Shown here: one piece after another, positions 1,700-52,670 of the stretch
How the letters are laid out: every line of letters begins with the position of its first letter
How positions within the stretch are numbered: position 1 is the first letter of the stretch
IMG/VR virus record: IMGVR_UViG_3300034072_000758
Location: 372,001-436,000 of that record
Length of the DNA: 64,000 nucleotides
Direction: 5' to 3' (one strand)
Program-made: the position numbers and the translations under genes
The notes under the pieces: generated by a model
What the model saw: only the letters and a program-made list of their open reading frames with translations
The model's database searches: none
What the model was told of the DNA's origin: nothing

Positions 1700-4600
1700 A
1701 TGTCTAATTTTAAAAATTTTGGACTTACAGGTGTCAGCAACGATGTTCAGTTTGGTAAAGGCGGCGCGCGCCTTACACAAATCAACGGGACATTTGCGGC
1801 AAAGAACGCTCAAGGTAACGCATTCGTAAGATTGCAAGTTGCCGAAGGTAATGCCGCTGAGGATGCTGTAACCGTAAGCCAACTGTCGAACGCAATTGCG
1901 AACGTCACAAGCCTCAATGATGGTCTTCAAGCCGAAATCGATGCTATTGAACTTGGCGCTGGTCTGAACACAGACGGCACATATTCGGCCCCGGTTTCGT
2001 CCAATTATCTGGAAAACGCAACCAGCCTCCGTGACGCTGATTCGCTTTTGGACGCCGCTCTCAAGTCGAACGTTGACGCTGTTTATACACGTCTCGATTC
2101 GGCAGACGCAAACACTACCGCTCTGTCCGGTAACGTAACTGCCCTAGAAGGCGATGTCGCCGCTCTGGAAGGCCGCGTTGACACAGTTGAAACAGACCTT
2201 GCTACATTGGAATCTGATCTGGCTGCTGAGACCTCCGCTCGTGAAGCCGCTGATCTGGCTATCAATTCGAACGTTTCGGCTGTTGCTGCTAACGTAGCCG
2301 CTGTTGCTTCGGGCCTGTCAAACACCAACGCAAACGTTTCCGCTCTGGAAGGTCGTGTAGTCACAGCCGAAGGCGACATCGACGCTCTCGAAACACGCAT
2401 GACAGCCGTCGAAGCCAACACTTCCGGCATCGCCGACCGTGTTGACGCTCTGGAAGCTAACGTCACAACACTTCAAGGTGATGTTTCCGCTCTGGAAATC
2501 GATCTGGCTGCTGAGACCTCCGCTCGTGAAGCCGCTGATCTGGCTATCAATTCGAACGTTTCGGCTGTTGCTGCTAACGTATCGGCTCTCCAAAGCGACG
2601 TTGCTGATCTGGAAGCTGGTCTGGCACAAGAAATCCTCGACCGTACCGCTGCGGATGATGCTCTGGAACTGGCTCTGGCCAATACAGATGCAAACGTTGC
2701 TACACTGTCGGGTTCCCTGTCGAACACCAACGCTAACGTAGCCGCTCTGGCTGCTAACGCTGTTCTTAAGGACGGTTCGGTTGCCTTCACTGGCGCTCTG
2801 AACATGGGTAACCACCTGATCTCGAACGTGGCTGAACCAGTATCCGCTCAGGACGCTGCTACAAAGAACTACGTCGATGGTAAGGTTGCTGGTCTGGGTA
2901 ACGCTTTTGACTACAAAGGCACAATCGACGCAGAAGGCGGTATCGACGCTGATACAGACACACAGTTTGATCTCGGTCGTGAAGCTGGTGACTACTATAA
3001 GATTGCCGTTGCTGGTGAAGTTACATCCGGCGCTGTCACAATCTTCTTCAACGTAGGCGACGGTCTGGTTTGGAACATTGCTGGTGGTATCGATAAGATC
3101 GACAACACTGATTCGGTTGTTCTCGGAACTGCTGGTCAGATTGAAGTTTCTGGTACAACAGACGTAGGCTTTACCGTTTCTATCGATGGTGATTATACTG
3201 CCGCTCGTCAACAAGAAGTTTCTGACGAAGCTAACGCTCGTGTCGCCGCCGATGGTATTCTGACACAAGCTATTTCCGACGAAGCTAACACCCGCGCTGC
3301 TGCTGATACTCTGATCAACAACGCCATCGACGCTGTTGAAGCTGATCTGGCTAACACCAACGCTAACGTAGCGGTCGTTGTTTCCAATCTGGCCAACACA
3401 GACGCAAACGTTGCCGCTCTGGATGGTCGTGTAGACACTGCCGAAGCCGACATCAACGCTCTGGAACTGGCTCTGGCCAACACAGACGCAAACGTTGCCG
3501 CTCTGGATGGTCGTCTGACAGCAGTTGAAGCCAACACAACCGGCATTGCTGGTCGTGTTGACGCTCTGGAAGCTAATTCGGTAATCCTGTTCTCGAATGT
3601 TGCCGCTCTGGAAGCCGCTGATACAGCAATCAATGCCAACGTTGCCGCTCTGGCCGCTGATCTGGCTAATACCAATGCTGATCTGGCTACTCTGGAAGGC
3701 CGCGTTGACACTGTTGAAACAGACCTCGCCACACTGGAAGGTCGTGTTGATACAGCCGAAGCCGACATCAACGCTCTGGAAGCTGCTGACGTTCTGATCA
3801 ATTCGAACGTAACGGCTCTGACCGGAACTGTTTCGGACCTTCAAGATGAAGTTGACGCAACACAAGCGGGTGCTGGTCTGGCAACAGACGGTTCATATGT
3901 TGTGCCAACAGGTACAACTTATATCAACAACACAACATCGCTCGCCAATGCCACTCTGGCTCTGGACGTTGCTGTTGCTAACGTTGCGCAAGCTCTCGAA
4001 AACCTCCAACAAGACGAAATCATTTCGCTCGATACTTTCACATCGGTTAAGGCTGCTAACACAGGCACACAGTTCAACGGAAACGTTGACGGTACTAAGA
4101 CCCTCGTTGGTGAAGTTCTGGCCGGTGCGGCGACAGACTCCAAGTTCGTTCTTGACACAAGAACTGCTGGTGAAATCGCTATCTCGGCTGTTTCTAACAC
4201 TGCCACAGACGTTGATCTGCGACTGGTTGCGCAAGGCGCTGGTCACGTAATCATCGGCGAAACAGGCGTTGGTTTCATCCAAGCCGACGATGGCTACGAC
4301 ATGACCGTTGCTGGTGGTGTTGGTGCTGATCTGAATCTCTTGGGCGCTGCCGTAAAGATCGGTTCGGAAGATGGAACATCGGTTGCTGAGTTCGTCGGTA
4401 CAAACGGCGCTGCTACAAAGGTAACTGTAACCAACGGCAACACTGCTGTTACTTTCGCTGCTACTGGCGCAACAAACACAGACCTCGTATTTGCTCCTTC
4501 GGGAACAGGTTCGGTCAATGTTTCGAACGCTAAGATCACAGGCGTTGCTAACGCTGTTGCTACCACAGACGCAGTAAACAAGGGTCAACTGGATACAGCG

Positions 4601-4942
4601 GTCGCCGCTTCTCAAGTTGGTTCCCTGCGCACTGTAGTTGCTTCGCTCACAGAAGTTGACGGCACAGTTGACATCGGCGTTGTTCTCGGAACAGTCGTTC
4701 GTATCAAGGTTCTGGTAACTGGTGCTTTCGGTTCGGGTACAACTATCACAGTTGGTTCGGACGCTGGTACAGCTAACGAACTCGCAACTGCTTCGGACAT
4801 CGATGAAGCTGCCGCTGGTGTTTACATCATCGAAACAGTTAAACAATACCTGTCGTCTTCGACAATCCAAGCAACAATCACCAACTCTACTCTGTCGGGT
4901 ACTGGTGCTGCTAAGGTTATCGTTGAGTACATCGCTGAGTAA
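1700..4942 (+). CDS. Long trimeric coiled-coil fibre protein (tail/head whisker-like)
   Basis: 1080 aa; heptad repeats (ANVAALEGRVDTAEADINALE); DAATKNYVD and DAVNKGQLD neck-like motifs; GGAG RBS; strong codon bias; followed by a terminator. Confidence 0.75.
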   Translation: MSNFKNFGLTGVSNDVQFGKGGARLTQINGTFAAKNAQGNAFVRLQVAEGNAAEDAVTVSQLSNAIANVTSLNDGLQAEIDAIELGAGLNTDGTYSAPVSSNYLENATSLRDADSLLDAALKSNVDAVYTRLDSADANTTALSGNVTALEGDVAALEGRVDTVETDLATLESDLAAETSAREAADLAINSNVSAVAANVAAVASGLSNTNANVSALEGRVVTAEGDIDALETRMTAVEANTSGIADRVDALEANVTTLQGDVSALEIDLAAETSAREAADLAINSNVSAVAANVSALQSDVADLEAGLAQEILDRTAADDALELALANTDANVATLSGSLSNTNANVAALAANAVLKDGSVAFTGALNMGNHLISNVAEPVSAQDAATKNYVDGKVAGLGNAFDYKGTIDAEGGIDADTDTQFDLGREAGDYYKIAVAGEVTSGAVTIFFNVGDGLVWNIAGGIDKIDNTDSVVLGTAGQIEVSGTTDVGFTVSIDGDYTAARQQEVSDEANARVAADGILTQAISDEANTRAAADTLINNAIDAVEADLANTNANVAVVVSNLANTDANVAALDGRVDTAEADINALELALANTDANVAALDGRLTAVEANTTGIAGRVDALEANSVILFSNVAALEAADTAINANVAALAADLANTNADLATLEGRVDTVETDLATLEGRVDTAEADINALEAADVLINSNVTALTGTVSDLQDEVDATQAGAGLATDGSYVVPTGTTYINNTTSLANATLALDVAVANVAQALENLQQDEIISLDTFTSVKAANTGTQFNGNVDGTKTLVGEVLAGAATDSKFVLDTRTAGEIAISAVSNTATDVDLRLVAQGAGHVIIGETGVGFIQADDGYDMTVAGGVGADLNLLGAAVKIGSEDGTSVAEFVGTNGAATKVTVTNGNTAVTFAATGATNTDLVFAPSGTGSVNVSNAKITGVANAVATTDAVNKGQLDTAVAASQVGSLRTVVASLTEVDGTVDIGVVLGTVVRIKVLVTGAFGSGTTITVGSDAGTANELATASDIDEAAAGVYIIETVKQYLSSSTIQATITNSTLSGTGAAKVIVEYIAE
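2216..2581 (+). repeat. Exact 81-bp direct repeat (2216-2296 and 2501-2581) inside the fibre gene
   Basis: Both copies encode DLAAETSAREAADLAINSNVSAVAANV. Confidence 0.9.
3388..3514 (+). repeat. Exact 43-bp direct repeat (3388-3430 and 3472-3514) inside the fibre gene
   Basis: Both copies encode LANTDANVAALDGR. Confidence 0.9.
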
Positions 4943-17979: not shown

Positions 17980-18175
17980 AGACTTTTCAGCCAAGGTGAA
18001 AAAAGCCAATCTTATTGGCTCCAATGAGATCAGGCTTTCGACTAAGGAAGCCATCGATCTCGTTACGGACATTAATGCGGTCCTTGCCGACTTAGCCGAA
18101 CTCTCTCGTAAGCTACAGGCCACAGAGAAGCTTCTGGGGGCCGAAATCATCATGGATGGTGGTGAATTTGAGTGA
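17966..18175 (+). CDS. Hypothetical protein
   Basis: 69-aa ORF from ATG 17966 overlapping the upstream gene end. Confidence 0.55.
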   Translation: MAAIKDFSAKVKKANLIGSNEIRLSTKEAIDLVTDINAVLADLAELSRKLQATEKLLGAEIIMDGGEFE

Positions 18176-18503
18176 CGCGCCTTTGAGGACGGCTTTGGCC
18201 GCTACTATCGATGGTTTGTGGGAAATCACCACGGCTGTTGTGGATACCGATCCCAACAAAGACACAAATGTATCCCATCTGCGATGGATGTTGGAAACCC
18301 TTGAAGAGAACATAAACGATTATCCCACCGATAAGATTAGTCGATGGATCGGATACGTTCAAGGTGTCATGGCTATGAAGGGTTTGATCAGCGTGAAAGC
18401 CGAGCGGGATAGAACCCGCCCGTTATTTCATGATGCATATTCGGCAATGGGACAGTCAATCCCGCCTACACTCTCGAATAAAACTGAGGATCACGAACGT
18501 TAA
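18156..18503 (+). CDS. Hypothetical protein
   Basis: 115-aa ORF; KISRWIGYVQG motif. Confidence 0.55.
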   Translation: MVVNLSDAPLRTALAATIDGLWEITTAVVDTDPNKDTNVSHLRWMLETLEENINDYPTDKISRWIGYVQGVMAMKGLISVKAERDRTRPLFHDAYSAMGQSIPPTLSNKTEDHER

Positions 18504-19392
18504 GGGCGATCAGTCGCAGCCAGTTCGGCGAATTGCGAAGATCAAACGAGTTCTGAACCAGACGGATAGTCACCGGCTTGGTGAGAATACCATTGCGTTC
18601 CAACTCGCGGATAACTTCGATCACTTCATGCTTTTGCTGATCCGTGAGATTGGACTTGATGTGATCCTTGATCTGATCGATATAGCCTAACATTTCTTGG
18701 TTCGTGAACCAAAGATCGATAGTATAGGCGCGCGAAACAACGGCGCTGTCCCATTGAGACAGACGGCGATTTGAAATGAAGATGATCCTTCCCGAATAAT
18801 CGATCTTGTTAGGAAGATGGGCGCAGACGTAGGAATAGACCGCCATTTTTTTGATAGGATCGATATGGCTGTCGTCGCTGAAATCGTCAACTTCGCAATA
18901 GTCCTTCGGCGTCTTATAAGACGTATAAGGCAGGAAACGTTCAATATCTTCGAGTGTGGGAACGTTGCGAAGAATACGGGACATGGATTCGACCCAAATC
19001 TTGCGCTCGTCCGGGGTCATGACCGCTGTGTTGAACGACCGGGCGGTGTCATAAGAGACTTGTTTGACTTCGCCGGTATTGAGAGCGCCTTTGAGGATGT
19101 TGATACCGTTGGCATCATCGATCACAGCATCACAATCATCGAATACCAGAAGGCCGTCGAGATTTTCCACGAGCTTGCGATACAGAGACGCGACGGTGAT
19201 GTTACCAGTGGCCGAACAGAAGTCGATACCTTCCTTAAGACCAAGTTCCTCGATCTTCTTGAAAACGTGGTGGGATTTACCGCAGCCGGGAGCACCGGTA
19301 ACGATCAGAGACTTCGTATTCATAGTCTTTCCGCCAGCGATCAGTTCAACGTAATCGTTGAGAATATCGTACTGCTGGTTCATATCGCGCAT
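18466..19392 (-). CDS. P-loop ATPase (AAA-like)
   Basis: Walker A GAPGCGKS, Walker B LLVFDDCD, IIFISN sensor; GGAG RBS before ATG 19392. Confidence 0.85.
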   Translation of the reverse strand: MRDMNQQYDILNDYVELIAGGKTMNTKSLIVTGAPGCGKSHHVFKKIEELGLKEGIDFCSATGNITVASLYRKLVENLDGLLVFDDCDAVIDDANGINILKGALNTGEVKQVSYDTARSFNTAVMTPDERKIWVESMSRILRNVPTLEDIERFLPYTSYKTPKDYCEVDDFSDDSHIDPIKKMAVYSYVCAHLPNKIDYSGRIIFISNRRLSQWDSAVVSRAYTIDLWFTNQEMLGYIDQIKDHIKSNLTDQQKHEVIEVIRELERNGILTKPVTIRLVQNSFDLRNSPNWLRLIALNVRDPQFYSRV

Positions 19393-19455
19393 TCGAAGTC
19401 TCCTATATTTTGTATTACTCAACTCTACTATAAATCCAATAAATGTCAATGTATG

Positions 19456-19484
19456 TTGACAGCATAAAAACAAAATATTATACT
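19456..19484 (+). promoter_or_regulatory. Sigma70-type promoter
   Basis: TTGACA-17-TATACT; predicted start site coincides with ATG 19491. Confidence 0.75.
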
Positions 19485-19490
19485 GCGCCT

Positions 19491-20051
19491 ATGAAAATGA
19501 TAGATAGTGAAAATCCCGCATCTGTAAAATTACAGAAAGACGCATTTGAGTTCGCTGCGACCGCGCACCGTTCGATTAATCAACTGCGTAAGTATACCCA
19601 GACGCCGTATGAAGGTCATCCCTTTGCGGTGGGTCAAATGCTGATCAATCTGGTTCCAGAAGCAACACCGGAAGATGTCGCATCCGCGTATTTACATGAC
19701 GTGGTTGAAGATACTCCCGTGAAGATCGAAGAAATCTATGAGAAGTTTGGTCCGGTGGTTGGACAAAACGTTGATGGCTTGACTGACGTAAGCAAGCCAG
19801 AAGACGGCAACCGCAAATTCCGTAAGGAAATGGACAAAGAACATACTCTGGAACAACCAGTCAATGTTCTGAACATCAAGCTGGTGGACTTTCTTCATAA
19901 CCAAGAGAGTATCTTGGAATATGACCCGGACTTTGCGACCGTGTGGTGTCGTGAAAAGGCCAAGATTATCTTCGATCCGAGGATGGATAAGGCGTCTCCG
20001 GTCCTTCTGGAAAAGGCTCGTAACGCATTCAGGTCGTGGTACAAAGCTTGA
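19491..20051 (+). CDS. HD-domain small alarmone hydrolase (RelA/SpoT/Mesh1-like)
   Basis: AFEFAATAH...Q.RK....PY..HP..V...LHDVVEDT...KLVDFLHN. Confidence 0.85.
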   Translation: MKMIDSENPASVKLQKDAFEFAATAHRSINQLRKYTQTPYEGHPFAVGQMLINLVPEATPEDVASAYLHDVVEDTPVKIEEIYEKFGPVVGQNVDGLTDVSKPEDGNRKFRKEMDKEHTLEQPVNVLNIKLVDFLHNQESILEYDPDFATVWCREKAKIIFDPRMDKASPVLLEKARNAFRSWYKA

Positions 20052-20106
20052 CAATACTTTGATCCTATACTATAAGTGTGGGGAAACTAATATAAAGGGA
20101 CATTTT

Positions 20107-21018
20107 ATGGACTATATCTTCGACATCGATGGTACTATTGCGGACGTTAAGCACCGCTTACACTTCATCGAGAATGGTAATCGTGACTGGCCGGGGTTCT
20201 TCAAGGCCATGATTCACGACTCGCCTATCGTTGATATGTTTACGATGGCCCATGAATTGAAAAAGGCTGGCGGAAACATTTTGGTTTCGACCGCGCGCCC
20301 CGATGACTATCAGCAAGAGACTATCGACTGGATGGTTGCTTTGGGCTTCCCATACGACAAGCTGTATATGCGCGCGGCTGGTGACTTCCGCCGCGACAGC
20401 ATTGTCAAGGAAGAACTGCTGTTACAGATGGTTCAAGACGGCTATGATCCGAAGGTCGCATTCGATGACAAGGTTAATGTTATCGAAATGTACCGCAACA
20501 ACGGTCTGATCGCTTTACAGTGCGACGCTGACGCCGAGAAGATCAGCCCGTATGCTGGTCAAACTCTGCTTCACGTTCTGGTCGGGCCTTCGGGCGCGGG
20601 TAAGTCTACGTATATCGCCAAGAACTACAAGGAAACCGATGTGGTGTCTTCGGACGGCATTCGTCTCTGGTTGTTCGGTGATTTTGATACGGCGCATACC
20701 CCGGAAAATTTGAAGCGTACTTGGTCTACGGTCTATGCGTTCGTCGCTGCCCGTCTGGCGAATGGTATTTTCACGGTTCTCGATGCGACCAACATCAAGG
20801 CCAAGGATCGTCTGGAAGTTTTCAAGCATGTCCCCAAGGGCGTTCTCGTGAACTACATTCTGATTGATCGTCCTCTGGATGATAAGCTGCGGGATCGTGG
20901 CTGGCGTCCTGAGTCTTTGGTGTTGAAGCACCACAAGACTTTCCAGTCGTCCGTTAAGTCGGCTCTGGCTGGGGATGACCGCCCTGACGTGTTCGTATTC
21001 GATAAGCGTGAAAAGTAA
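20107..21018 (+). CDS. Polynucleotide 3'-phosphatase / 5'-kinase (Pnk-like, HAD then P-loop)
   Basis: FDIDGT HAD motif, RAAGDFRRDSIVKEE, FDD; GPSGAGKST and VLDATN kinase motifs. Confidence 0.85.
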   Translation: MDYIFDIDGTIADVKHRLHFIENGNRDWPGFFKAMIHDSPIVDMFTMAHELKKAGGNILVSTARPDDYQQETIDWMVALGFPYDKLYMRAAGDFRRDSIVKEELLLQMVQDGYDPKVAFDDKVNVIEMYRNNGLIALQCDADAEKISPYAGQTLLHVLVGPSGAGKSTYIAKNYKETDVVSSDGIRLWLFGDFDTAHTPENLKRTWSTVYAFVAARLANGIFTVLDATNIKAKDRLEVFKHVPKGVLVNYILIDRPLDDKLRDRGWRPESLVLKHHKTFQSSVKSALAGDDRPDVFVFDKREK

Positions 21019-22172
21019 TGTATATTTCGCAAGAACAGGTGGATGCCTATCTCGCCAAAGTGGATTTATCCGACAGCGAGAATGGTGTCCACGCCATCAA
21101 TATCATCAAGGACCGGGTTATTCAGGCAATTTCTGAATGGTCCGGCCTTGAACCGGCTGTGATTAATCCAGACCCAATCGTTGAAGTCTCAGATAACTTC
21201 GACAATTTGTATTATGACGAGAACGCCATCGCGCGTGACCCTCGTTATACGCATTATGTCGATGCTCACCACATTTTCCGTACCCAAATGACATCGGCTA
21301 TTCCGCCGTTCCTGAGAAAGTACGCCAGATCATACACGGGCCTCGACACATCCTTGTTCCTTGCGGCACACGGGCTGGTCTATCGCCGGGATGTTATCGA
21401 CCGCACCCATGTGGGTGAACCACACCAATTGGACCTATGGGTTCTGAATCGGTCGCGCCGCTTGAATCGGAATGATCTGGTGGATATGATCGGTGTGGTT
21501 TTGAACACATTGCTTCCCGGCTGTAAATATCGTTGTAATGAGACCTATCACCCATACACTATCAATGGTCTCGAAGTTGAAGTGTGGTTTGGTACGGAAA
21601 AGACAGGGCGGTGGGTGGAAGTATTAGAATGTGGTGAAGCGCACCCTTGGCTTCTGGACGATACCTATATGAACAGCAGACATGACCGTTGGACCGGCCT
21701 TGCTATGGGTATCGGTCTGGATCGTCTGTGTATGCTTCTCAAGGGCATTGATGACATTCGCCTGTTGCGCAGCACGGACCCTCGCGTGGCCGTTCAGATG
21801 GCGAACCTTAAGCCGTACAAGGGAGTCAGTAAGCAACCGGCCATCAACCGCGATATGTCTCTGTGCGTTCAAGAAGTCGATATGGAAAATATCGGCGGTC
21901 GTGTCCGTGAGGCTCTTGGCGAGCGCGCCGATTGGTTGGAAGAAATCGAGCTTCGTAAGGATTTCTCTTATGATGAAATACCCGATCAGGCGCGGGAGCG
22001 TCTGGGTATCCAACCGGGTCAGCGCAATATTCTGTTGCGTTTGATCCTGCGTTCCCCCACCGATAGCATTCCCAAAGAAATTGGGAATGAAATTTATGAC
22101 ATCGTATACCGAGTCATTAACGAAGGAGCCGGGGGATACGAAATAAAATACTCTGGAAAAGGAAAAGAATAA
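21018..22172 (+). CDS. Single-chain PheS-like class II ligase with C-terminal anticodon-binding (FDX-ACB-like) domain
   Basis: FRTQMTS; motif 2 GLVYRRDVIDRTH..PHQLD; HPYTINGLEVE; WVEVLECG; motif 3 GLAMGIGLDRLCML; C-terminal INRDMSL..LR.ILRS. Confidence 0.8.
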   Translation: MYISQEQVDAYLAKVDLSDSENGVHAINIIKDRVIQAISEWSGLEPAVINPDPIVEVSDNFDNLYYDENAIARDPRYTHYVDAHHIFRTQMTSAIPPFLRKYARSYTGLDTSLFLAAHGLVYRRDVIDRTHVGEPHQLDLWVLNRSRRLNRNDLVDMIGVVLNTLLPGCKYRCNETYHPYTINGLEVEVWFGTEKTGRWVEVLECGEAHPWLLDDTYMNSRHDRWTGLAMGIGLDRLCMLLKGIDDIRLLRSTDPRVAVQMANLKPYKGVSKQPAINRDMSLCVQEVDMENIGGRVREALGERADWLEEIELRKDFSYDEIPDQARERLGIQPGQRNILLRLILRSPTDSIPKEIGNEIYDIVYRVINEGAGGYEIKYSGKGKE

Positions 22173-22173
22173 T

Positions 22174-22578
22174 ATGTCTCAACCACCGTATGCTACGATT
22201 ACCGCTCACAAGGGTCACCTTGTCTGTGAACTTCTGGTAGATGGTGACGTTCCCGGTGCCGTAGCGTCCAGTATCAATAACCCCGGTCGTTTCGGTCAGG
22301 TTATCATGGACACCAGTATCCATCTGGGTATTTCGGCAGAAGCCGTTGCGCTTCTGAAAACGATCAAGCGCGGGAGGGACGCTATCGGTGATGTCGATTG
22401 GTTCACCACGGCGGACGGTAAGGCGGCGTTTTGTTGGATTGGTGGTCCAAAGGCTCTGATCCGAGTCGAAGGGGCTGTTGGTTCTCGTGAATATATCGGC
22501 GCTACTAATATCGAGGGTAAGTACGTGCTCGTAGCCAATGATGTTCCAGCCGAAGCCATAGAAGCCATCGAAGCATAG
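22174..22578 (+). CDS. Hypothetical protein
   Basis: 134-aa ORF closing the operon. Confidence 0.65.
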   Translation: MSQPPYATITAHKGHLVCELLVDGDVPGAVASSINNPGRFGQVIMDTSIHLGISAEAVALLKTIKRGRDAIGDVDWFTTADGKAAFCWIGGPKALIRVEGAVGSREYIGATNIEGKYVLVANDVPAEAIEAIEA

Positions 22579-22603
22579 AAAAAGCCCCTTTCGGGGCTTT
22601 TTT
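22579..22603. terminator. Bidirectional intrinsic terminator
   Basis: AAAAAGCCCC-TTTC-GGGGCTTTTTT between convergent genes. Confidence 0.85.
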
Positions 22604-22604
22604 G

Positions 22605-22880
22605 TTATCGTTTGGATCGGGATACGCTGCGAAGAGGATGTCGTTTTTTCGGGTGAACCCGGCGTTCGAGAAGTAGGGGCTTGCGCGCTTCGCCGTCATC
22701 GTACTTTTTATATTTAAAGATCGGCCCTTCAAAGTCGCGCTTAAATAGTTCGTCACGGATTACGATCCCCTCACGTCTTTCTTCGTTTATAACTTGAATG
22801 TCAGGATCGATTTTCGCCGTTTCTTGGCGAATGTGATCTAGTTCCTCAGCGGTAGCATTCTCAACAACAAAAATCTTCAT
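22605..22880 (-). CDS. Hypothetical protein
   Basis: GGAGG RBS before ATG 22880. Confidence 0.55.
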   Translation of the reverse strand: MKIFVVENATAEELDHIRQETAKIDPDIQVINEERREGIVIRDELFKRDFEGPIFKYKKYDDGEARKPLLLERRVHPKKRHPLRSVSRSKR

Positions 22881-23007
22881 GTGACCCTCCAACCAAATAA
22901 TATTCGTTACTCTATATTATATCTACAGATTGTCAAGTAATAATTCAGAAAAAAATTGATTTACTGTATTCCTCTAAGTTATACTTAAGAATCTTTGAGG
23001 ATAAAAT

Positions 23008-23739
23008 ATGAGTAATACTTTAGTAACCGCATGGTTTGATATTGGTAGAGTAAATTGGAACCAACACTCAAGAAGCGCGGAAGAATATATCGACCGATTT
23101 TCTAATCTAGCAAAGCTAGATACCAATTTGATAATTTACACTACCCGCAATTACGCGGGTAGACTTGAGAAGATCAGAGCCGATAACGGATTCTCGAATT
23201 TGACGAAAGTTGTAATCGTTGAATTTCCCGATCCAAAGTACGCCGATATATTAAAAGCTATTGAAGAAACCCAACAACATCCTGATTTCACTAAGCATTT
23301 AATGGCTGATGTTACAGGTCTCCCTCAGTATCAATATCCCGAATACGTGCTCGTTACTACCCTCAAGTCCTCATTCGTGGCGGATGCCATTGAACGTGGG
23401 TTAGTAACCACCGAACATGCCACTTGGGTAGATTTCGGCTTCATGGTGACACCATCAACTGAACTGGTTATCCCACCATTGTATCCTGAGCATATTTCAG
23501 CTTTTCCGCTCGAAGAAATCGCGGACCCGGATGCGTTCATTTATGACTCTATCGTCAATGCGTATTCAACACCGTCCACCAAATTATTCACAGCCCCGGT
23601 AACCATGTGGCGTTCATTATCAGATGAAATGCTTATTGCTTTGGAACTGGTGCTTGAAAATGGAATGGTGGCCAAAGATACCGTTCTGTTTTCCATTTGT
23701 AACATTAAATTCCCGCATGTTTTTGAGAGCAATCGATAA
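23008..23739 (+). CDS. HtrL/YibB-like glycosyltransferase-related protein
   Basis: TLVTAWFDIGR N-terminus; K..FVADAI; WVDFG. Confidence 0.65.
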   Translation: MSNTLVTAWFDIGRVNWNQHSRSAEEYIDRFSNLAKLDTNLIIYTTRNYAGRLEKIRADNGFSNLTKVVIVEFPDPKYADILKAIEETQQHPDFTKHLMADVTGLPQYQYPEYVLVTTLKSSFVADAIERGLVTTEHATWVDFGFMVTPSTELVIPPLYPEHISAFPLEEIADPDAFIYDSIVNAYSTPSTKLFTAPVTMWRSLSDEMLIALELVLENGMVAKDTVLFSICNIKFPHVFESNR

Positions 23740-25115
23740 TGAATAAGCTTGTAATATTTGATCTTGACGGTGTTTTGCTTGATAGCCGAGAACTCCATTA
23801 TGAATCGCTCAACGCGGCCTTAGCCAAGGTTGGCCAAGAATATATCATCACCCGCGACGAACACCTGAGCCTGTACGATGGCCTCAACACCACGAAGAAG
23901 CTTCGTATGCTCACCGAGCGTAAGGGCCTCCCAGCGGGCTTACACCAGCAAGTATGGGAAGACAAGCAAGCGGCCACCTTTGACCTGATCAAGCGCTTCC
24001 CACTGTCTCCCAAGGCCGTACAAGCGTGTCAGGAGATTAAGAAACGCGGCTGGAAGATCGCCGTGGCCTCCAACAGCATCCGCGAGACTGTAAAGCTGGC
24101 TTTGATGGCTATTGGTATCATGGAATATGTAGACGTGTTCGTAAGCAACGAAGACGTGACCCGGACGAAGCCTTACCCGGAAATGTATTGGCAAGCTATG
24201 ACCAAATTGAACGCCTTGCCCCGCAACACCATCATCTGTGAAGACTCACACATTGGCCGACAAGGCGCGCTGGATTCGGGTGCTAATCTGTTACCTATCG
24301 AAAATTCAGAGACTTGGACCGTCTCTGACATAACAAATCTTATTCAAGAAGTGGAAAACAAATCTATGGAACGCATTGCGTGGATTGATAAAAAGCTCAA
24401 CGTTCTTATCCCGATGGCGGGCGCTGGATCGCGCTTCGCCGATGCGGGCTATACCTTCCCTAAGCCTCTGATCGAGGTCCGTGGTAAGCCGATGATACAA
24501 GTGGTCGTTGAGAATCTTAACATACAAGCTAATTATATTTTCGTGGTCCAGAAAGCGCACTATGAAAAATATGATCTGGAACATGTGCTGAATAACATTG
24601 CCCCCGGCTGTAAGATTATTCAGACCGATGGCTTGACCGAAGGCGCTGCCTGTACTGCCCTGCTGGCCAAGGAATATATCGACAACGATGCCCCGCTGTT
24701 TTTTGCCAACTCGGATCAATTTGTGGAATGGAACAGCAATGAAGTCCTGTATGCCTTCAACGCGGATGGGATCGACGGTGGTATCGTTACGTTCGATGCC
24801 AATCACCCGAAATGGTCTTATGCCAAGGTAGGCGAAGATGGTTTTGTTTCGGAAGTTGCTGAGAAGAAAGTAATCTCCAACGATGCTACGGTCGGCTTCT
24901 ATTGGTGGAAACAAGGTTCGGATTTTGTAAAATATGCCGAACAAATGATAGAAAAGAATATCCGTGTCAACAATGAGTTCTATGTTTGCCCGGTATTTAA
25001 TCAGGCTATCGAAGACGGTAAGAAGATTCGTGTCAAGAAGACCGATGGTATGTGGGGGATCGGAACGCCGGAAGACCTCAACACCTTCTTGGAAAACTAC
25101 AAGGGTAAAATTTAA
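23739..25115 (+). CDS. Fused HAD phosphatase + sugar-nucleotidyltransferase
   Basis: FDLDGVL / KPYPE / EDS HAD motifs; IPMAGAGSRF...PKPLI nucleotidyltransferase motif; GIGTPEDL. Confidence 0.9.
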   Translation: MNKLVIFDLDGVLLDSRELHYESLNAALAKVGQEYIITRDEHLSLYDGLNTTKKLRMLTERKGLPAGLHQQVWEDKQAATFDLIKRFPLSPKAVQACQEIKKRGWKIAVASNSIRETVKLALMAIGIMEYVDVFVSNEDVTRTKPYPEMYWQAMTKLNALPRNTIICEDSHIGRQGALDSGANLLPIENSETWTVSDITNLIQEVENKSMERIAWIDKKLNVLIPMAGAGSRFADAGYTFPKPLIEVRGKPMIQVVVENLNIQANYIFVVQKAHYEKYDLEHVLNNIAPGCKIIQTDGLTEGAACTALLAKEYIDNDAPLFFANSDQFVEWNSNEVLYAFNADGIDGGIVTFDANHPKWSYAKVGEDGFVSEVAEKKVISNDATVGFYWWKQGSDFVKYAEQMIEKNIRVNNEFYVCPVFNQAIEDGKKIRVKKTDGMWGIGTPEDLNTFLENYKGKI

Positions 25116-25118
25116 CCC

Positions 25119-25856
25119 ATGAAAGTCGCCGTTCTATTTTATGGCCAACCTCGCTTCTGTAATGTTCTTGAATTGGTCAAGAACATTCAGGAGACGATCA
25201 TCAATAATGGTCATGATGTTGACGTGTATTCCCACTGCTGGTTTGAGCCGTCTGGGAGCTACACTGCTTCCACTTGGACCAACATGACCAGCACGACGAA
25301 AATGGTTCCAGACAACGCTATTGAGGTCATACGTAAGGAATATAAACCCGTTCGTATGCTGATCGATAAGCCACAGACATTCACGATTGATCCTGAAATA
25401 CTGGCATTCATCAATGATCCGGCTAAACACTGGAACCATGTCGGTGTTCCGTGGAACCAAAATATTTCAAATGTTCTCAGTCAGCTTAAAAGTGTTCAGA
25501 ACGTTTCTCGATTAGTTGATGATAGCTATGATTGGTATATTTTGGCTCGCTATGATGCTATCATTAAGAACTTTCCAGACCTGAATACTTGTGATCCTTC
25601 TTTGTTCTATTTGAACAATGTACATCATAAAATGCCAGATATGATCCAATTGTTTAGCAAGAAGTATCTGACTTGGGCGCAGAATGTATTCGATGATCAT
25701 AAGCAAGTTTATACCAATCTGATCGAACCCAGCCCCGAAGGCTTTAAACTTGCCGCTTTTGAAAAATATCACACGCGCCAAGACCTTAATCCTACAAATA
25801 TGAGGGCTTACGCCCTTCGAATACAAGGCGATCAGTTGGTCGTTCAATGGAATTAA
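25119..25856 (+). CDS. Putative glycosyltransferase-like protein
   Basis: MKVAVLFYGQPR, DVYSHCW and YDWYILARYD motifs typical of polysaccharide-locus proteins. Confidence 0.55.
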   Translation: MKVAVLFYGQPRFCNVLELVKNIQETIINNGHDVDVYSHCWFEPSGSYTASTWTNMTSTTKMVPDNAIEVIRKEYKPVRMLIDKPQTFTIDPEILAFINDPAKHWNHVGVPWNQNISNVLSQLKSVQNVSRLVDDSYDWYILARYDAIIKNFPDLNTCDPSLFYLNNVHHKMPDMIQLFSKKYLTWAQNVFDDHKQVYTNLIEPSPEGFKLAAFEKYHTRQDLNPTNMRAYALRIQGDQLVVQWN

Positions 25857-35441: not shown

Positions 35442-35868
35442 GCACGGCTATTTCCTTACCATGAGTAAAACACAACGAGAAATCTATGTCGAGCGCGTCT
35501 TGCCGGTAGATGAAGAAATTGTGTTTCCTATTTTGGTGGAAATAGCCCCTCAACTTCCTGAGATACAGGAAAACAAGTTTTACTACTATATCATGAAGGG
35601 AAAGGCGAGAATTGCTTTCATCACAAAGCGCCTCGATAACATGTGTGTGGGGAGATATATTCTCAAGGATGGAAAATGGTCAGCCCCGACTTGTTTCAAA
35701 AACGAATGCTTCGCGCGAGGTCGATCATTGACCGCTATTCTTCCGCCGTTTCTGATAGACGAAGAATGGGCTAAAGAAGTCGCGGACAAGTCAGTATATG
35801 GGCGTTCTAAAGCTTTATCTCTGGCGGACTTGGAACGCATTGGTGGTGGTACTCCCGACCAGAATTGA
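35434..35868 (+). CDS. Hypothetical protein
   Basis: 144-aa ORF; 3' end overlaps the antisense tRNA-Glu. Confidence 0.55.
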   Translation: MRRHGYFLTMSKTQREIYVERVLPVDEEIVFPILVEIAPQLPEIQENKFYYYIMKGKARIAFITKRLDNMCVGRYILKDGKWSAPTCFKNECFARGRSLTAILPPFLIDEEWAKEVADKSVYGRSKALSLADLERIGGGTPDQN

Positions 35869-35921
35869 ACTGGCACTCTCCGCTTGAAAGGCGGGCGTCA
35901 TGACCATTAGACCACGGGAGC
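35847..35921 (-). tRNA. tRNA-Glu(UUC), third in transcript
   Basis: Cloverleaf GCTCCCG..CTTTCAA..TTCAATT..GGGAGT-A-CCA. Confidence 0.92.
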
Positions 35922-35945
35922 ATAGTCAACAAAGTGTTAAATTGT

Positions 35946-36020
35946 TGGTACTCCCAACGGGATTCGAACCCGTGTCGCCGGATTGAAAGTCCAGCATCCT
36001 GACCACTAGAAGATGGGAGC
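35946..36020 (-). tRNA. tRNA-Glu(UUC), second in transcript
   Basis: Cloverleaf, loop CTTTCAA, encoded CCA. Confidence 0.92.
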
Positions 36021-36053
36021 ATAGAAAATCAAAAGCCCGATCTCTCGTTCTTT

Positions 36054-36127
36054 TGGTACTCCCTACGGGAATCGAACCCGCGTTGTCAGATTGAAAGTCT
36101 GTTGTCCTGCCATTAGACGAAGGGAGC
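36054..36127 (-). tRNA. tRNA-Glu(UUC), first in transcript
   Basis: Cloverleaf, loop CTTTCAA, encoded CCA. Confidence 0.92.
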
Positions 36128-52349: not shown

Positions 52350-52421
52350 GCCACGATAGCTGAGAAGGATTAGCGGCTGTCTGAAAAGCAGTAGAGAGAC
52401 GTTCGATACGTCTTCGTGGCA
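52350..52421 (+). tRNA. tRNA-Phe(GAA), atypical D-loop
   Basis: GCCACGA/TCGTGGC acceptor; loop CTGAAAA. Confidence 0.85.
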
Positions 52422-52422
52422 C

Positions 52423-52496
52423 AGTAGATTAGCTCAGTCTGGTAGAGCACACGCTTGATAAGCGTTAGGTCACTGGTTCAAATCCAGTATCTACTA
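52423..52496 (+). tRNA. tRNA-Ile(GAU)
   Basis: Cloverleaf; loop TTGATAA. Confidence 0.9.
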
Positions 52497-52497
52497 C

Positions 52498-52570
52498 GGT
52501 CGATTAGCTCAGTTGGTAGAGCACTGTCTTGATAAGGCATAGGTCGCTGGTTCGAATCCAGCATCGACTA
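52498..52570 (+). tRNA. tRNA-Ile(GAU), second copy
   Basis: Cloverleaf; loop TTGATAA. Confidence 0.92.
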
Positions 52571-52594
52571 CCTCCTTCGGGAGACTTTATTAAT

Positions 52595-52668
52595 GTAGCC
52601 GTAGCTCAGTCTGGTAGAGCATCTGGTTGAAACCCAGAGTGTCAGTGGTTCAAATCCACTCGGTTACA
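52595..52668 (+). tRNA. tRNA-Phe(GAA), second copy
   Basis: Cloverleaf; loop TTGAAAC. Confidence 0.9.
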
Positions 52669-52670
52669 CT

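What the first reader, a model, noticed from the sequence alone, without database searches (positions are those of the whole stretch)
19491..22578. Operon of small alarmone hydrolase + Pnk + PheS-like ligase: candidate tRNA-rescue module
An HD/SpoT-type hydrolase, an end-healing phosphatase-kinase (domain order reversed relative to T4 Pnk) and a class II aaRS-like ligase lie in tandem; the last two are coupled by TAATG. Established: T4 Pnk with Rnl1 repairs anticodon-nuclease cuts, and small alarmone hydrolases can neutralise toxic RelA/SpoT homologues, some of which pyrophosphorylate the tRNA CCA end. Inference: the three genes unblock, heal and recharge (or ligate) tRNAs attacked by host defences. 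No Rnl1-type ligase is visible in this window.
Basis: partly seen in the sequence, partly recalled or inferred. Interest (0 to 1): 0.68.

Follow-up and report, generated by a model that had tools for sequence, protein, structure and literature searches.

The report
Phage tRNA-care genes, loosely assembled
A giant phage carries, in one transcription unit, an alarmone hydrolase, an RNA end-healing kinase-phosphatase, a mitochondrial-type phenylalanyl-tRNA-synthetase look-alike of unknown function (SrmL) and a small unknown protein. Each gene family is real, but relatives show they are independent parts, not a conserved three-step tRNA rescue machine.

Summary
Window 19491-22578 has four co-directional genes, not three. 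They are a RelA/SpoT-type HD hydrolase, a phosphatase-then-kinase Pnk, a PheS-like protein joined to Pnk by TAATG, and a 134-aa ORF. A strong promoter-like site precedes them and a strong terminator follows. No RNA ligase is in the window.

The PheS-like protein is not an RNA ligase. It belongs to NCBIfam NF051887, "PheS-related mystery ligase SrmL". Its predicted structure matches full-length human mitochondrial PheRS, with a catalytic core plus an anticodon-binding domain. In the closest huge-phage relatives it lies at the end of a tRNA array, next to tRNA-Phe(GAA) genes.

The trio is not co-conserved:
- Pnk is next to SrmL in none of about 165 other SrmL loci or 38 other Pnk loci.
- The closest relative keeps Pnk in the same slot without HD or SrmL.
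- A 578-kb relative has the two genes about 165 kb apart.

This Pnk family normally sits beside an RNA ligase. The HD-type hydrolase recurs beside Pnk-ligase pairs in three other phages.

Best reading: a mosaic accessory operon of independent tRNA and translation maintenance genes. The most interesting part is SrmL.

The parts
19456..19484 (+). Sigma-70-like promoter site (TTGACA, 17 nt, TATACT) ending 6 nt before the HD start codon. It lies back to back with a TTGACA-16-TAGAGT site for the divergent minus-strand AAA ATPase gene.
   Evidence: 11 of 12 matches, the best site in 18000-23200; the pattern occurs 2 times in the window against 0.03 expected. Sequence read.
19491..20051 (+). Single-domain RelA/SpoT-type HD hydrolase (small alarmone hydrolase type), 186 aa.
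   Evidence: Pfam HD_4 E 4.9e-11. phrog_990 metal-dependent phosphohydrolase E 1.3e-21. NCBIfam spoT_relA positions 1-136 only, E 6e-18. PDB hits to Rel/SpoT hydrolase domains, MESH1 and SAH, with catalytic motifs aligned.
20048..20076 (+). Possible internal promoter (TTGACA, 17 nt, TATAAG) overlapping the HD stop codon. An AAAGGGA Shine-Dalgarno-like stretch follows, ahead of the Pnk ATG.
   Evidence: Read by eye. Not reported by the scan, because the second hexamer lacks the final T. Weak evidence.
20107..21018 (+). Bifunctional polynucleotide 3'-phosphatase / 5'-kinase (Pnk), 303 aa. The HAD phosphatase is N-terminal and the P-loop kinase is C-terminal.
   Evidence: Pfam HAD_PNKP E 1.7e-24 and AAA_33 E 3.2e-14. 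phrog_505/415 polynucleotide kinase. TIGR04075 bacterial Pnkp kinase part E 4.7e-15. Profile hits to Pnkp1 (4xrp), T4 Pnk phosphatase and CthPnkp kinase. Invariant D6/D8, K101, D120/D121, P-loop G160-K166 and S181/D183/R186 across 24 homologues.
21018..22172 (+). SrmL, the 'PheS-related mystery ligase', 384 aa. It combines a class II PheS-type catalytic core (about residues 20-260) with a C-terminal ferredoxin-fold anticodon-binding domain (about 275-370). This is the architecture of monomeric mitochondrial PheRS.
   Evidence: NCBIfam NF051887: 416 bits against a cut-off of 300, E 9.6e-125. Pfam tRNA-synt_2d E 2.8e-31. AF2 model pLDDT 93.9. Foldseek best hit is human mtPheRS 3CMQ at full length, E 2e-26, TM 0.73/0.70. 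Relatives carry PF03147 FDX-ACB. The start overlaps the Pnk stop codon in TAATG.
22174..22578 (+). 134-aa protein from a phage-only family of unknown function. Its ATG starts one base after the SrmL stop codon.
   Evidence: 243 homologues at E<=1e-3 among 1.84 billion representatives. No Pfam, PHROG, NCBIfam or PADLOC hit. AF2 pLDDT 96.3. No solved-structure match. Only uncharacterised phage proteins in BFVD. No homologue beside SrmL or Pnk elsewhere.
22578..22603 (.). Intrinsic terminator hairpin (11-bp stem, GC-rich core, T-run). It is shared with the convergent minus-strand 91-aa gene and closes the unit.
   Evidence: top terminator-like site. Sequence read.
52350..52669 (+). Two different tRNA-Phe(GAA) genes (52350-52422 and 52595-52669) in the phage tRNA array, 30 kb from SrmL. 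They are candidate substrates of SrmL.
   Evidence: ARAGORN. In relatives L006, L009 and L014, two dissimilar tRNA-Phe(GAA) genes flank SrmL directly.

Best explanation
The interval is one accessory transcription unit in a hypervariable island of a roughly 517-kb phage. The island lies between the FEN exonuclease gene of the replication module and sugar-nucleotide genes. The unit joins four separately mobile genes that look after tRNA and translation during infection.

1. A small alarmone hydrolase. It would degrade (p)ppGpp or (pp)pApp and could strip 3'-pyrophosphate from tRNA CCA ends, blunting stringent-response and toxSAS-type abortive defences.
2. A Pnk whose two active sites are intact. 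It would convert 2',3'-cyclic or 3'-phosphate and 5'-OH RNA ends to 3'-OH and 5'-phosphate. Its usual RNA ligase partner is not in this window and would have to be encoded elsewhere or supplied by the host.
3. SrmL, a monomeric mitochondrial-PheRS-like enzyme. It most likely adenylates an aromatic, Phe-like amino acid and transfers it to tRNA-Phe(GAA), probably the phage's own. This would give the phage a host-independent charging route.
4. A small phage protein of unknown role.

Shown here: the domain identities, intact catalytic motifs, the fold of SrmL, the operon anatomy and the synteny statistics.

Inferred: the substrates, the counter-defence roles, and that the genes act in parallel rather than as one obligatory pathway.
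For: Domain and motif evidence.

SrmL:
- It matches full-length mtPheRS by fold and by profile. Human mtPheRS scores E 2e-36, and the alignment runs through the linker into the start of the anticodon-binding domain.
- The motif 2 and motif 3 arginines and 45 family-invariant residues are kept in the window protein.
- It lies directly next to tRNA-Phe(GAA) in L005 and between two such genes in L006, L009 and L014. All ten tRNA-Phe genes within 3 kb of any SrmL gene are in that phage clade.
- The family is present in at least 526 bacterial species genomes and 452 metagenome contigs. It appears vertically inherited in Kribbella, where it lies about 2 kb from nusG-rplK-rplA.

Independence of the parts:
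- Pnk is adjacent to SrmL in 0 of about 165 other SrmL loci and 0 of 38 other Pnk loci.
- L174 keeps FEN, Pnk, HtrL and NTP-transferase synteny but has different genes in between, including ART-PolyVal domains.
- The 578-kb relative has the two genes about 165 kb apart.
- Of 30 ORFs downstream of Pnk homologues, 23 are Rnl1-type RNA ligases. Four further loci have a PF09414 ligase upstream.

Operon anatomy.

Known SAH activities.
Against: - The tight coupling (TAATG, and a one-base gap before the fourth gene) and the single terminator show these genes are co-expressed here.
- Relative to L174, HD and SrmL appear to have landed on either side of the resident Pnk. In relatives L005, L006, L009 and L014 the HD homologue already lies 4-7 kb from SrmL. 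Some selection for joint expression cannot be excluded.
- SrmL occupies exactly the slot that Rnl1 fills in most Pnk loci.
- The Phe-binding residues of canonical PheRS are changed family-wide: FPF to HPY, and HQxE to HQxD. Phe as the amino-acid substrate is therefore not established.
- No experiment exists for any SrmL member. NCBI names it a 'mystery ligase', and no literature was found.
Confidence: 0.55

Rival explanations
1. Integrated ligase-free tRNA 3'-end rescue. The SAH removes 3'-pyrophosphate. The Pnk phosphatase removes 3'-phosphate or 2',3'-cyclic phosphate from damaged CCA ends. SrmL then recharges the restored tRNA, especially tRNA-Phe. The genes would work as one pathway that needs no RNA ligase.
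For: - Co-transcription layout and overlapping stop and start codons.
- HD_4 genes recur beside Pnk-ligase pairs in L189, L183 and L179.
- HD and SrmL are neighbours (4-7 kb apart) in four relatives, and here both abut Pnk.
- SrmL sits where Rnl1 sits in other Pnk loci.
- SAHs are described as having a Pnk-like 3'-phosphatase activity on tRNA, and the assay used tRNA-Phe.
Against: - Pnk-SrmL adjacency is unique to this contig among more than 200 loci examined.
- The closest relative lacks HD and SrmL at this locus.
- The 578-kb relative separates the genes by about 165 kb.
- The island between FEN and HtrL is hypervariable, so co-location may reflect an insertion hot spot.
- SAH action alone already yields a 3'-OH.
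- The kinase half of Pnk has no role in this scheme.
Confidence: 0.18
2. The HD protein is mainly an RNA end-healing phosphoesterase that works with Pnk, comparable to the HD module of bacterial HD-Pnk enzymes known from the literature. It would not be an alarmone hydrolase.
For: - It recurs next to Pnk and RNA ligase genes in three unrelated phage contigs: L189 (HD, Pnk, an 88-aa ORF, then a PF09414 ligase), L183 (Pnk, Rnl1, HD) and L179.
- SAHs can dephosphorylate tRNA 3' ends.
Against: - The sequence is a typical RelA/SpoT hydrolase domain (HD_4, spoT_relA) with all alarmone-hydrolase motifs. Its nearest solved relatives are (p)ppGpp hydrolases.
- The Pnk already carries its own HAD 3'-phosphatase.
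- The two activities are not mutually exclusive.
Confidence: 0.15
3. SrmL replaces Rnl1 as the sealing enzyme: a class II aaRS-like protein that joins healed tRNA halves.
For: Positional only. It lies immediately 3' of Pnk, where 23 of 30 tested neighbours are Rnl1-type ligases. No RNA ligase is in the window.
Against: - The fold and profile are PheRS throughout, with an anticodon-binding domain.
- There is no match to the RNA or DNA ligase families PF09511, PF09414 or PF01068.
- Class II aaRS chemistry activates carboxylates, not 5'-phosphates (established enzymology).
- In relatives, SrmL sits among intact tRNA genes far from any Pnk.
Confidence: 0.03
4. SrmL is not a translational synthetase at all. 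It would be a tRNA-dependent or tRNA-independent transferase for a non-protein substrate, for example a modified aromatic amino acid. Its phage role would be unrelated to charging tRNA-Phe for protein synthesis.
For: - The two pocket phenylalanines and the HQxE glutamate are replaced family-wide.
- NCBI curators treat the family as a mystery ligase distinct from PheS.
- From general knowledge, not tested here: bacteria that carry it should also have the essential canonical pheST genes.
Against: - T181 and A229, which align with the PheS pocket residues T251 and A294 of E. coli, are retained (numbering from memory).
- The anticodon-binding domain is conserved.
- It is directly adjacent to tRNA-Phe(GAA) in phages.
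Confidence: 0.2

Closest known systems
Phage stand-alone small alarmone hydrolases (PbcSpo of Salmonella phage PVP-SE1, PaSpo of phage SSU5)
   Same: A single RelA/SpoT hydrolase domain encoded by a phage. The catalytic motifs are present. The known members neutralise all tested toxSAS, and related SAHs restore pyrophosphorylated tRNA.
   Different: The SAH subfamily was not assigned. The activity is untested. Here the gene is fused into an operon with Pnk and SrmL.
T4 Pnk plus Rnl1 tRNA repair, and bacterial Pnkp/Hen1 or Pnkp1-Rnl-Hen1 repair systems
   Same: The HAD phosphatase is homologous to those of T4 Pnk and Pnkp1, and the kinase to that of CthPnkp. The same family is adjacent to Rnl1-type or PF09414 ligases in most other loci.
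   Different: The domain order is phosphatase then kinase. There is no ligase in this 64-kb window. An aaRS-like gene occupies the ligase slot.
Human mitochondrial PheRS (FARS2; PDB 3CMQ, 3TUP)
   Same: The whole-chain architecture and fold match: a PheS-type core fused by a short linker to a ferredoxin-fold anticodon-binding domain, with no editing subunit.
   Different: Sequence identity is about 21%. The pocket motif FPF is HPY and HQLE is HQxD in every SrmL. The origin is prokaryotic or phage. The substrate is unknown.
NCBIfam NF051887 'PheS-related mystery ligase SrmL'
   Same: The window protein scores 416 bits against a cut-off of 300, so it is a member.
   Different: It is a phage copy on a long branch, with two short insertions. 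Uniquely, it is placed beside Pnk rather than in a tRNA array or a bacterial chromosome.

Membership tests
Small alarmone hydrolase (RSH hydrolase-only) | Single RelA/SpoT HD hydrolase domain without a synthetase domain | tested here: met
   186 aa. HD_4 is the only domain family matched, apart from a sub-threshold hit to the general HD model. It matches positions 1-136 of the 687-position spoT_relA model.
Small alarmone hydrolase (RSH hydrolase-only) | Catalytic motifs: the His of HP, the HD dyad, the ED pair and the LHN helix | tested here: met
   The alignment to Rel/SpoT hydrolase chains shows the GHPFAV, LHDVVEDT and KLVDFLHN equivalents conserved.
Small alarmone hydrolase (RSH hydrolase-only) | Hydrolysis of (p)ppGpp or (pp)pApp, or of tRNA 3'-pyrophosphate; neutralisation of toxSAS | not testable with these tools
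   Needs enzyme and toxicity-rescue assays.
Bifunctional polynucleotide kinase-phosphatase (Pnk) | HAD DxDxT nucleophile motif, motif III Lys and motif IV DD | tested here: met
   D6, D8, K101, D120 and D121 are invariant in 24 homologues. HAD_PNKP E 1.7e-24.
Bifunctional polynucleotide kinase-phosphatase (Pnk) | P-loop kinase with the polynucleotide-kinase Asp/Arg signature | tested here: met
   The G160-K166 P-loop and S181, D183, R186 are invariant. The best solved match is the CthPnkp kinase domain, E 2.8e-20.
T4-type tRNA repair cassette (Pnk plus RNA ligase) | An RNA ligase gene (Rnl1, Rnl2/PF09414 or RtcB) encoded with the Pnk | tested here: not met
   None in the window. The rest of the 517-kb contig could not be read. 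A scan for PF09414 ligases did not return this contig among the best 80 of 267, which is inconclusive.
SrmL (NCBIfam NF051887) | Score above the curated equivalog cut-off | tested here: met
   416.3 bits against a cut-off of 300.
SrmL (NCBIfam NF051887) | PheS-type core plus C-terminal FDX-ACB domain, with the family-invariant HPYT, HQxDxW and GLAMGIGLDR motifs | tested here: met
   Alignments A1 and A4. Full-length fold match to mtPheRS.
Canonical phenylalanyl-tRNA synthetase (PheS alpha or mtPheRS) | Class II motif 2 and motif 3 arginines for ATP binding | tested here: met
   R123/R124 in GLVYRRD and R236 in GLDR are invariant.
Canonical phenylalanyl-tRNA synthetase (PheS alpha or mtPheRS) | Phe-binding FPF motif and HQxE glutamate | tested here: not met
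   HPY replaces FPF and D139 replaces the glutamate in all 49 aligned SrmL sequences. Bacterial PheS and human mtPheRS keep FPF and E.
Canonical phenylalanyl-tRNA synthetase (PheS alpha or mtPheRS) | Scores above the pheS or pheS_mito equivalog cut-offs | tested here: not met
   pheS_mito 114 bits against 258; pheS 96 bits against 237.
Canonical phenylalanyl-tRNA synthetase (PheS alpha or mtPheRS) | Charges tRNA-Phe with Phe | not testable with these tools
   Only indirect evidence: adjacency to tRNA-Phe(GAA) genes in four related phages.
ATP-dependent RNA ligase (nucleotidyltransferase superfamily) | Ligase nucleotidyltransferase fold and family match for the PheS-like protein | tested here: not met
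   No PF09511, PF09414 or PF01068 hit. The fold is a class II aaRS.
Conserved three-gene module (HD + Pnk + SrmL) | Co-occurrence of the three genes in related genomes | tested here: not met
   0 of about 165 other SrmL loci and 0 of 38 other Pnk loci have the pair. L174 and the 578-kb relative contradict it.

The most novel reading that the evidence does not exclude
SrmL is the prokaryotic and phage counterpart of the monomeric mitochondrial PheRS architecture. It works on a dedicated phage tRNA-Phe(GAA): each of these phages carries two dissimilar tRNA-Phe genes. The altered HPY/HQxD pocket may give it a changed amino-acid specificity. In this phage it has been recruited, together with an SAH, around a Pnk. 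Together they would form a ligase-free route that unblocks, dephosphorylates and recharges tRNA 3' ends attacked by host defences. A corollary is that mtPheRS may descend from an SrmL-like bacterial or phage gene, as several mitochondrial replication and transcription enzymes descend from phage genes.
Probability: 0.12. Interest if true: 0.85.

Novelty: new variant of a known kind. Interest (0 to 1): 0.52.

Why it matters
Phages are known to fight tRNA-directed defences with repair enzymes, spare tRNAs and alarmone hydrolases. This locus puts representatives of several such tools into one operon. That makes it a convenient test bed, even though the comparative data say the tools are separable.

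The larger point is SrmL:
- It is a very widespread family, found in hundreds of bacterial species and many huge phages.
- It has the exact architecture of mitochondrial PheRS but a remodelled amino-acid pocket.
- NCBI calls it a 'mystery ligase', and I found no paper on it.
- Its position between two tRNA-Phe(GAA) genes in huge phages gives the first concrete, testable substrate hypothesis.

If SrmL is a self-contained, editing-free tRNA-Phe charging enzyme, it would be an unusually compact phage-borne synthetase. It would also bear on the origin of the mitochondrial enzyme. If it charges something other than Phe, it would be a natural reassignment tool.

Tried and rejected
- **Near-identical phage genomes.** Megablast of 19400-22900 against 50,697 phage records gave only a 39-nt chance-like hit. 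No annotated close relative exists.
- **orf134 as a conserved partner of SrmL.** The ~130-aa ORFs downstream of SrmL in L005 and L006 are unrelated to it. No homologue lies in any SrmL or Pnk locus. Its own homologues sit in unrelated phage contexts. Rejected.
- **Minus-strand ORF 22605-22892 as a ligase remnant.** The weak PF09414 hit (E 1.4e-3, last 35 profile positions) was not reproduced by PHROGs or NCBIfam or by tblastn with real PF09414 ligases. Treated as chance.
- **A conserved neighbour of SrmL across bacteria.** Clustering 1,694 neighbouring ORFs found only genus-level synteny. In Kribbella the neighbours are nusG, rplK and rplA.
- **Defence-system models.** PADLOC gave no hits for any of six proteins.
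- **Literature.** Searches for SrmL, mystery ligase, and bacterial or phage monomeric PheRS found nothing relevant.
- **RNA ligase elsewhere on the same contig.** A PF09414-profile scan of IMG/VR returned 80 of 267 loci, none from this contig. Inconclusive.
- **Fold of orf134.** No solved-structure relative by Foldseek or VIA-align.
- **Complex prediction.** Not used. The report does not claim that these proteins bind, and adjacency is unique to one genome.

Full report
**What is there**

The window comes from IMG/VR contig IMGVR_UViG_3300034072_000758, which is 516,805 bp. It has no close relative among annotated phage records. The window carries DNA polymerase B, ThyX, an ATP-dependent DNA ligase, a FEN-type exonuclease, a T4 gp15-like tail protein and 22 tRNA genes.

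The finding's interval holds four co-directional genes:
- An HD hydrolase, 19491-20051.
- A Pnk, 20107-21018. The upstream ATG at 19921 is not the start, because all homologues begin at the M-x-x-I-F-D-I-D-G-T motif.
- A PheS-like gene, 21018-22172.
- A 134-aa ORF, 22174-22578.

The unit is bracketed on both sides. At the 5' end an 11/12 sigma-70-like site at 19456-19484 lies back to back with the promoter-like site of a divergent AAA ATPase gene. At the 3' end an 11-bp-stem terminator at 22578-22603 is shared with a convergent 91-aa gene. The Pnk stop and PheS-like start overlap in TAATG. The fourth gene's ATG starts one base after the PheS-like stop codon. A weaker promoter-like site overlaps the HD stop codon.

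**The HD protein**

It is a hydrolase-only RelA/SpoT homologue. Pfam gives HD_4, and NCBIfam spoT_relA matches only the N-terminal 136 positions of its model. The nearest solved relatives are Rel/SpoT hydrolase domains, MESH1 and a small alarmone hydrolase, with the catalytic motifs aligned.

Stand-alone phage SAHs neutralise every toxSAS tested (PMC7229694). SAHs also restore aminoacylation of tRNA-Phe whose CCA end was pyrophosphorylated, and the authors compare that activity to the 3'-phosphatase of T4 Pnk (bioRxiv 10.1101/2021.04.30.441581).

**The Pnk**

Both halves are intact. D6/D8, K101 and D120/D121 of the HAD fold are invariant in 24 homologues. So are the P-loop and the S181-D183-R186 signature of polynucleotide kinases.

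The family profile aligns its N-terminal half to the C-terminal phosphatase of T4 Pnk and to Pnkp1. It aligns its C-terminal half to the N-terminal kinase of Clostridium thermocellum Pnkp. The reversed order is real.

The family is a genuine RNA-repair family. Among 38 other loci with a full-length homologue, 23 of 30 tested ORFs just downstream are Rnl1-type ligases (PF09511). One of the 30 (L189) is a PF09414 ligase with an OB domain. Four further loci (L175, L176, L179, L194) have a PF09414 ligase just upstream. The window has no ligase of either type.

**The PheS-like protein**

It is a member of NCBIfam NF051887, 'PheS-related mystery ligase SrmL', at 416 bits against a cut-off of 300. 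It fails the pheS and pheS_mito cut-offs.

With 49 homologues the AlphaFold model is confident (pLDDT 93.9). Its best structural match is full-length human mitochondrial PheRS (3CMQ, E 2e-26, TM 0.73/0.70 over about 399 columns). The family profile also hits mtPheRS best, at E 2e-36. That alignment runs through the linker into the anticodon-binding domain. Some relatives carry Pfam FDX-ACB.

The ATP-binding arginines of motifs 2 and 3 are invariant. However, the two phenylalanines that line the Phe pocket of all PheRS are His and Tyr in every SrmL, and the HQxE glutamate is Asp. The residues aligned to the E. coli pocket residues T251 and A294 are kept (the E. coli numbering is from my own knowledge).

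This is a carboxylate-activating, tRNA-binding enzyme, not an RNA ligase. Its amino-acid substrate is probably aromatic and Phe-like but is not established.

**Distribution and context of SrmL**

The family is large. At least 526 bacterial species genomes encode it, including Kribbella, heterocystous cyanobacteria, Myxococcota, Gemmatimonadota, Xanthobacteraceae and candidate-phyla bacteria. At least 452 metagenome contigs encode it. In IMG/VR only six contigs do, five of them between 145 and 578 kb.

The window protein sits on a long branch. It falls in a well-supported clade with a 415-kb phage and Alphaproteobacteria. A second phage clade lies elsewhere in the tree. No neighbour is conserved across bacterial lineages. 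In Kribbella the gene lies about 2 kb from nusG-rplK-rplA.

The informative context is in the closest huge-phage relatives. In L006, L009 and L014, SrmL closes a tRNA array and is flanked on both sides by two dissimilar tRNA-Phe(GAA) genes. In L005 a tRNA-Phe and a tRNA-Val immediately precede it. All ten tRNA-Phe genes found within 3 kb of any SrmL gene belong to this clade.

These phages are related, so this counts as roughly one evolutionary event. Even so, both flanks of one gene being Phe in a 17-tRNA array is unlikely by chance, roughly 1% by my estimate. The window phage also has two different tRNA-Phe(GAA) genes, 30 kb away.

**Is the trio a module?**

- tblastn of the window's Pnk against 172 SrmL-bearing loci (about 165 of them other than this contig) found it only in this contig.
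- SrmL is absent from all 38 other Pnk loci.
- The closest relative available, L174, shares FEN at 73%, Pnk at 57% and the HAD-NTP-transferase at 89% identity. It keeps the order FEN, Pnk, HtrL, NTP-transferase, but has unrelated small genes and two ART-PolyVal proteins where the window has the AAA ATPase, HD, SrmL and orf134. Pnk is therefore the resident gene of a hypervariable island.
- The 578-kb phage that has SrmL in its tRNA array has its Pnk, with a PF09414 ligase, about 165 kb away.

Two facts count in favour of some functional affinity.
- RSH-type HD genes recur beside Pnk-ligase pairs in three other contigs: L189, L183 and L179.
- The HD homologue lies 4-7 kb from SrmL in L005, L006, L009 and L014. 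In this phage, two former neighbours now flank Pnk.

**Conclusion**

The most economical reading is a mosaic accessory operon. Its members each deal with tRNA or translation stress and act in parallel.
- The SAH acts against alarmone and toxSAS responses.
- The Pnk acts, with a ligase from elsewhere, against RNA breaks.
- SrmL gives phage-controlled charging of tRNA-Phe.
- The fourth gene belongs to a phage-only family of unknown fold and function.

The integrated 'unblock, heal, recharge' pathway remains possible in a ligase-free, 3'-end-focused form. It rests on one genome's gene order. The RNA-ligase reading of SrmL is rejected.

The part that deserves follow-up is SrmL itself. It is a widespread, unstudied, mitochondrial-PheRS-shaped enzyme, and there is now a specific substrate hypothesis for it.

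Noticed in passing
L006:7615-9087, L009:9714-11314, L014:9873-11482 (related huge-phage contigs): SrmL is flanked by two dissimilar tRNA-Phe(GAA) genes. The upstream copy is canonical. The downstream copy has a GCTT/AAGC D-stem, a UUGAAAC anticodon loop and a 4-nt variable loop. This may be an enzyme with a dedicated tRNA partner.
   Followed up: partly
window 52350-52422: This tRNA-Phe(GAA) has an unusual D-arm (GCTG...TAGC, with an AGAAGGAT loop). A more canonical tRNA-Phe(GAA) lies at 52595-52669. Several other tRNAs are also duplicated (Ile, Met, Asp, and three Glu on the minus strand at 35847-36127).
   Followed up: no
window 22174-22578: The 134-aa protein belongs to a phage family with 243 detectable homologues and a confident predicted fold, but no solved-structure relative. 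In some phages the domain is fused to longer proteins, for example a 394-aa DUF1937-domain protein in BFVD and a 1911-aa protein with 17 matched stretches.
   Followed up: partly
window 19422-19449 (-) and 22909-22936 (-): The same promoter-like motif, TTGACA-16-TAGAGT, precedes both minus-strand genes that bracket the operon (the AAA ATPase starting at 19392 and the 91-aa gene starting at 22880). This suggests a shared promoter class.
   Followed up: no
window 19484-19491: The -10 hexamer of the best promoter-like site ends 6 nt before the HD start codon, and no Shine-Dalgarno sequence is present. The HD mRNA may be leaderless.
   Followed up: no
window 23008-25856 and L174:4262-6813: Downstream of the operon lie HtrL_YibB, a HAD-NTP-transferase fusion (split into two genes in L174) and further uncharacterised genes. 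This looks like a sugar-nucleotide pathway, possibly for DNA or surface modification. In L174 the island instead carries two ART-PolyVal ADP-ribosyltransferase-domain genes.
   Followed up: no
L007/L094:7064-7429 (alphaproteobacterial chromosome OY970184.1): A 121-aa NusG-domain protein lies just upstream of the bacterial SrmL copy, in a region with an integrase, a phage capsid gene and a DNA-ligase fragment. In Kribbella, SrmL lies near the housekeeping nusG-rplK-rplA genes.
   Followed up: no
window 1700-4942: A 1080-aa protein made mostly of coiled coil, with a YadA-stalk-like stretch near the C-terminus. It is probably a fibre or tape-measure-like structural protein.
   Followed up: no
L260:99-1220: A CCA-adding-enzyme-like gene (PolyA_pol) lies 5 kb from a close homologue of orf134 in an unrelated phage contig.
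   Followed up: no
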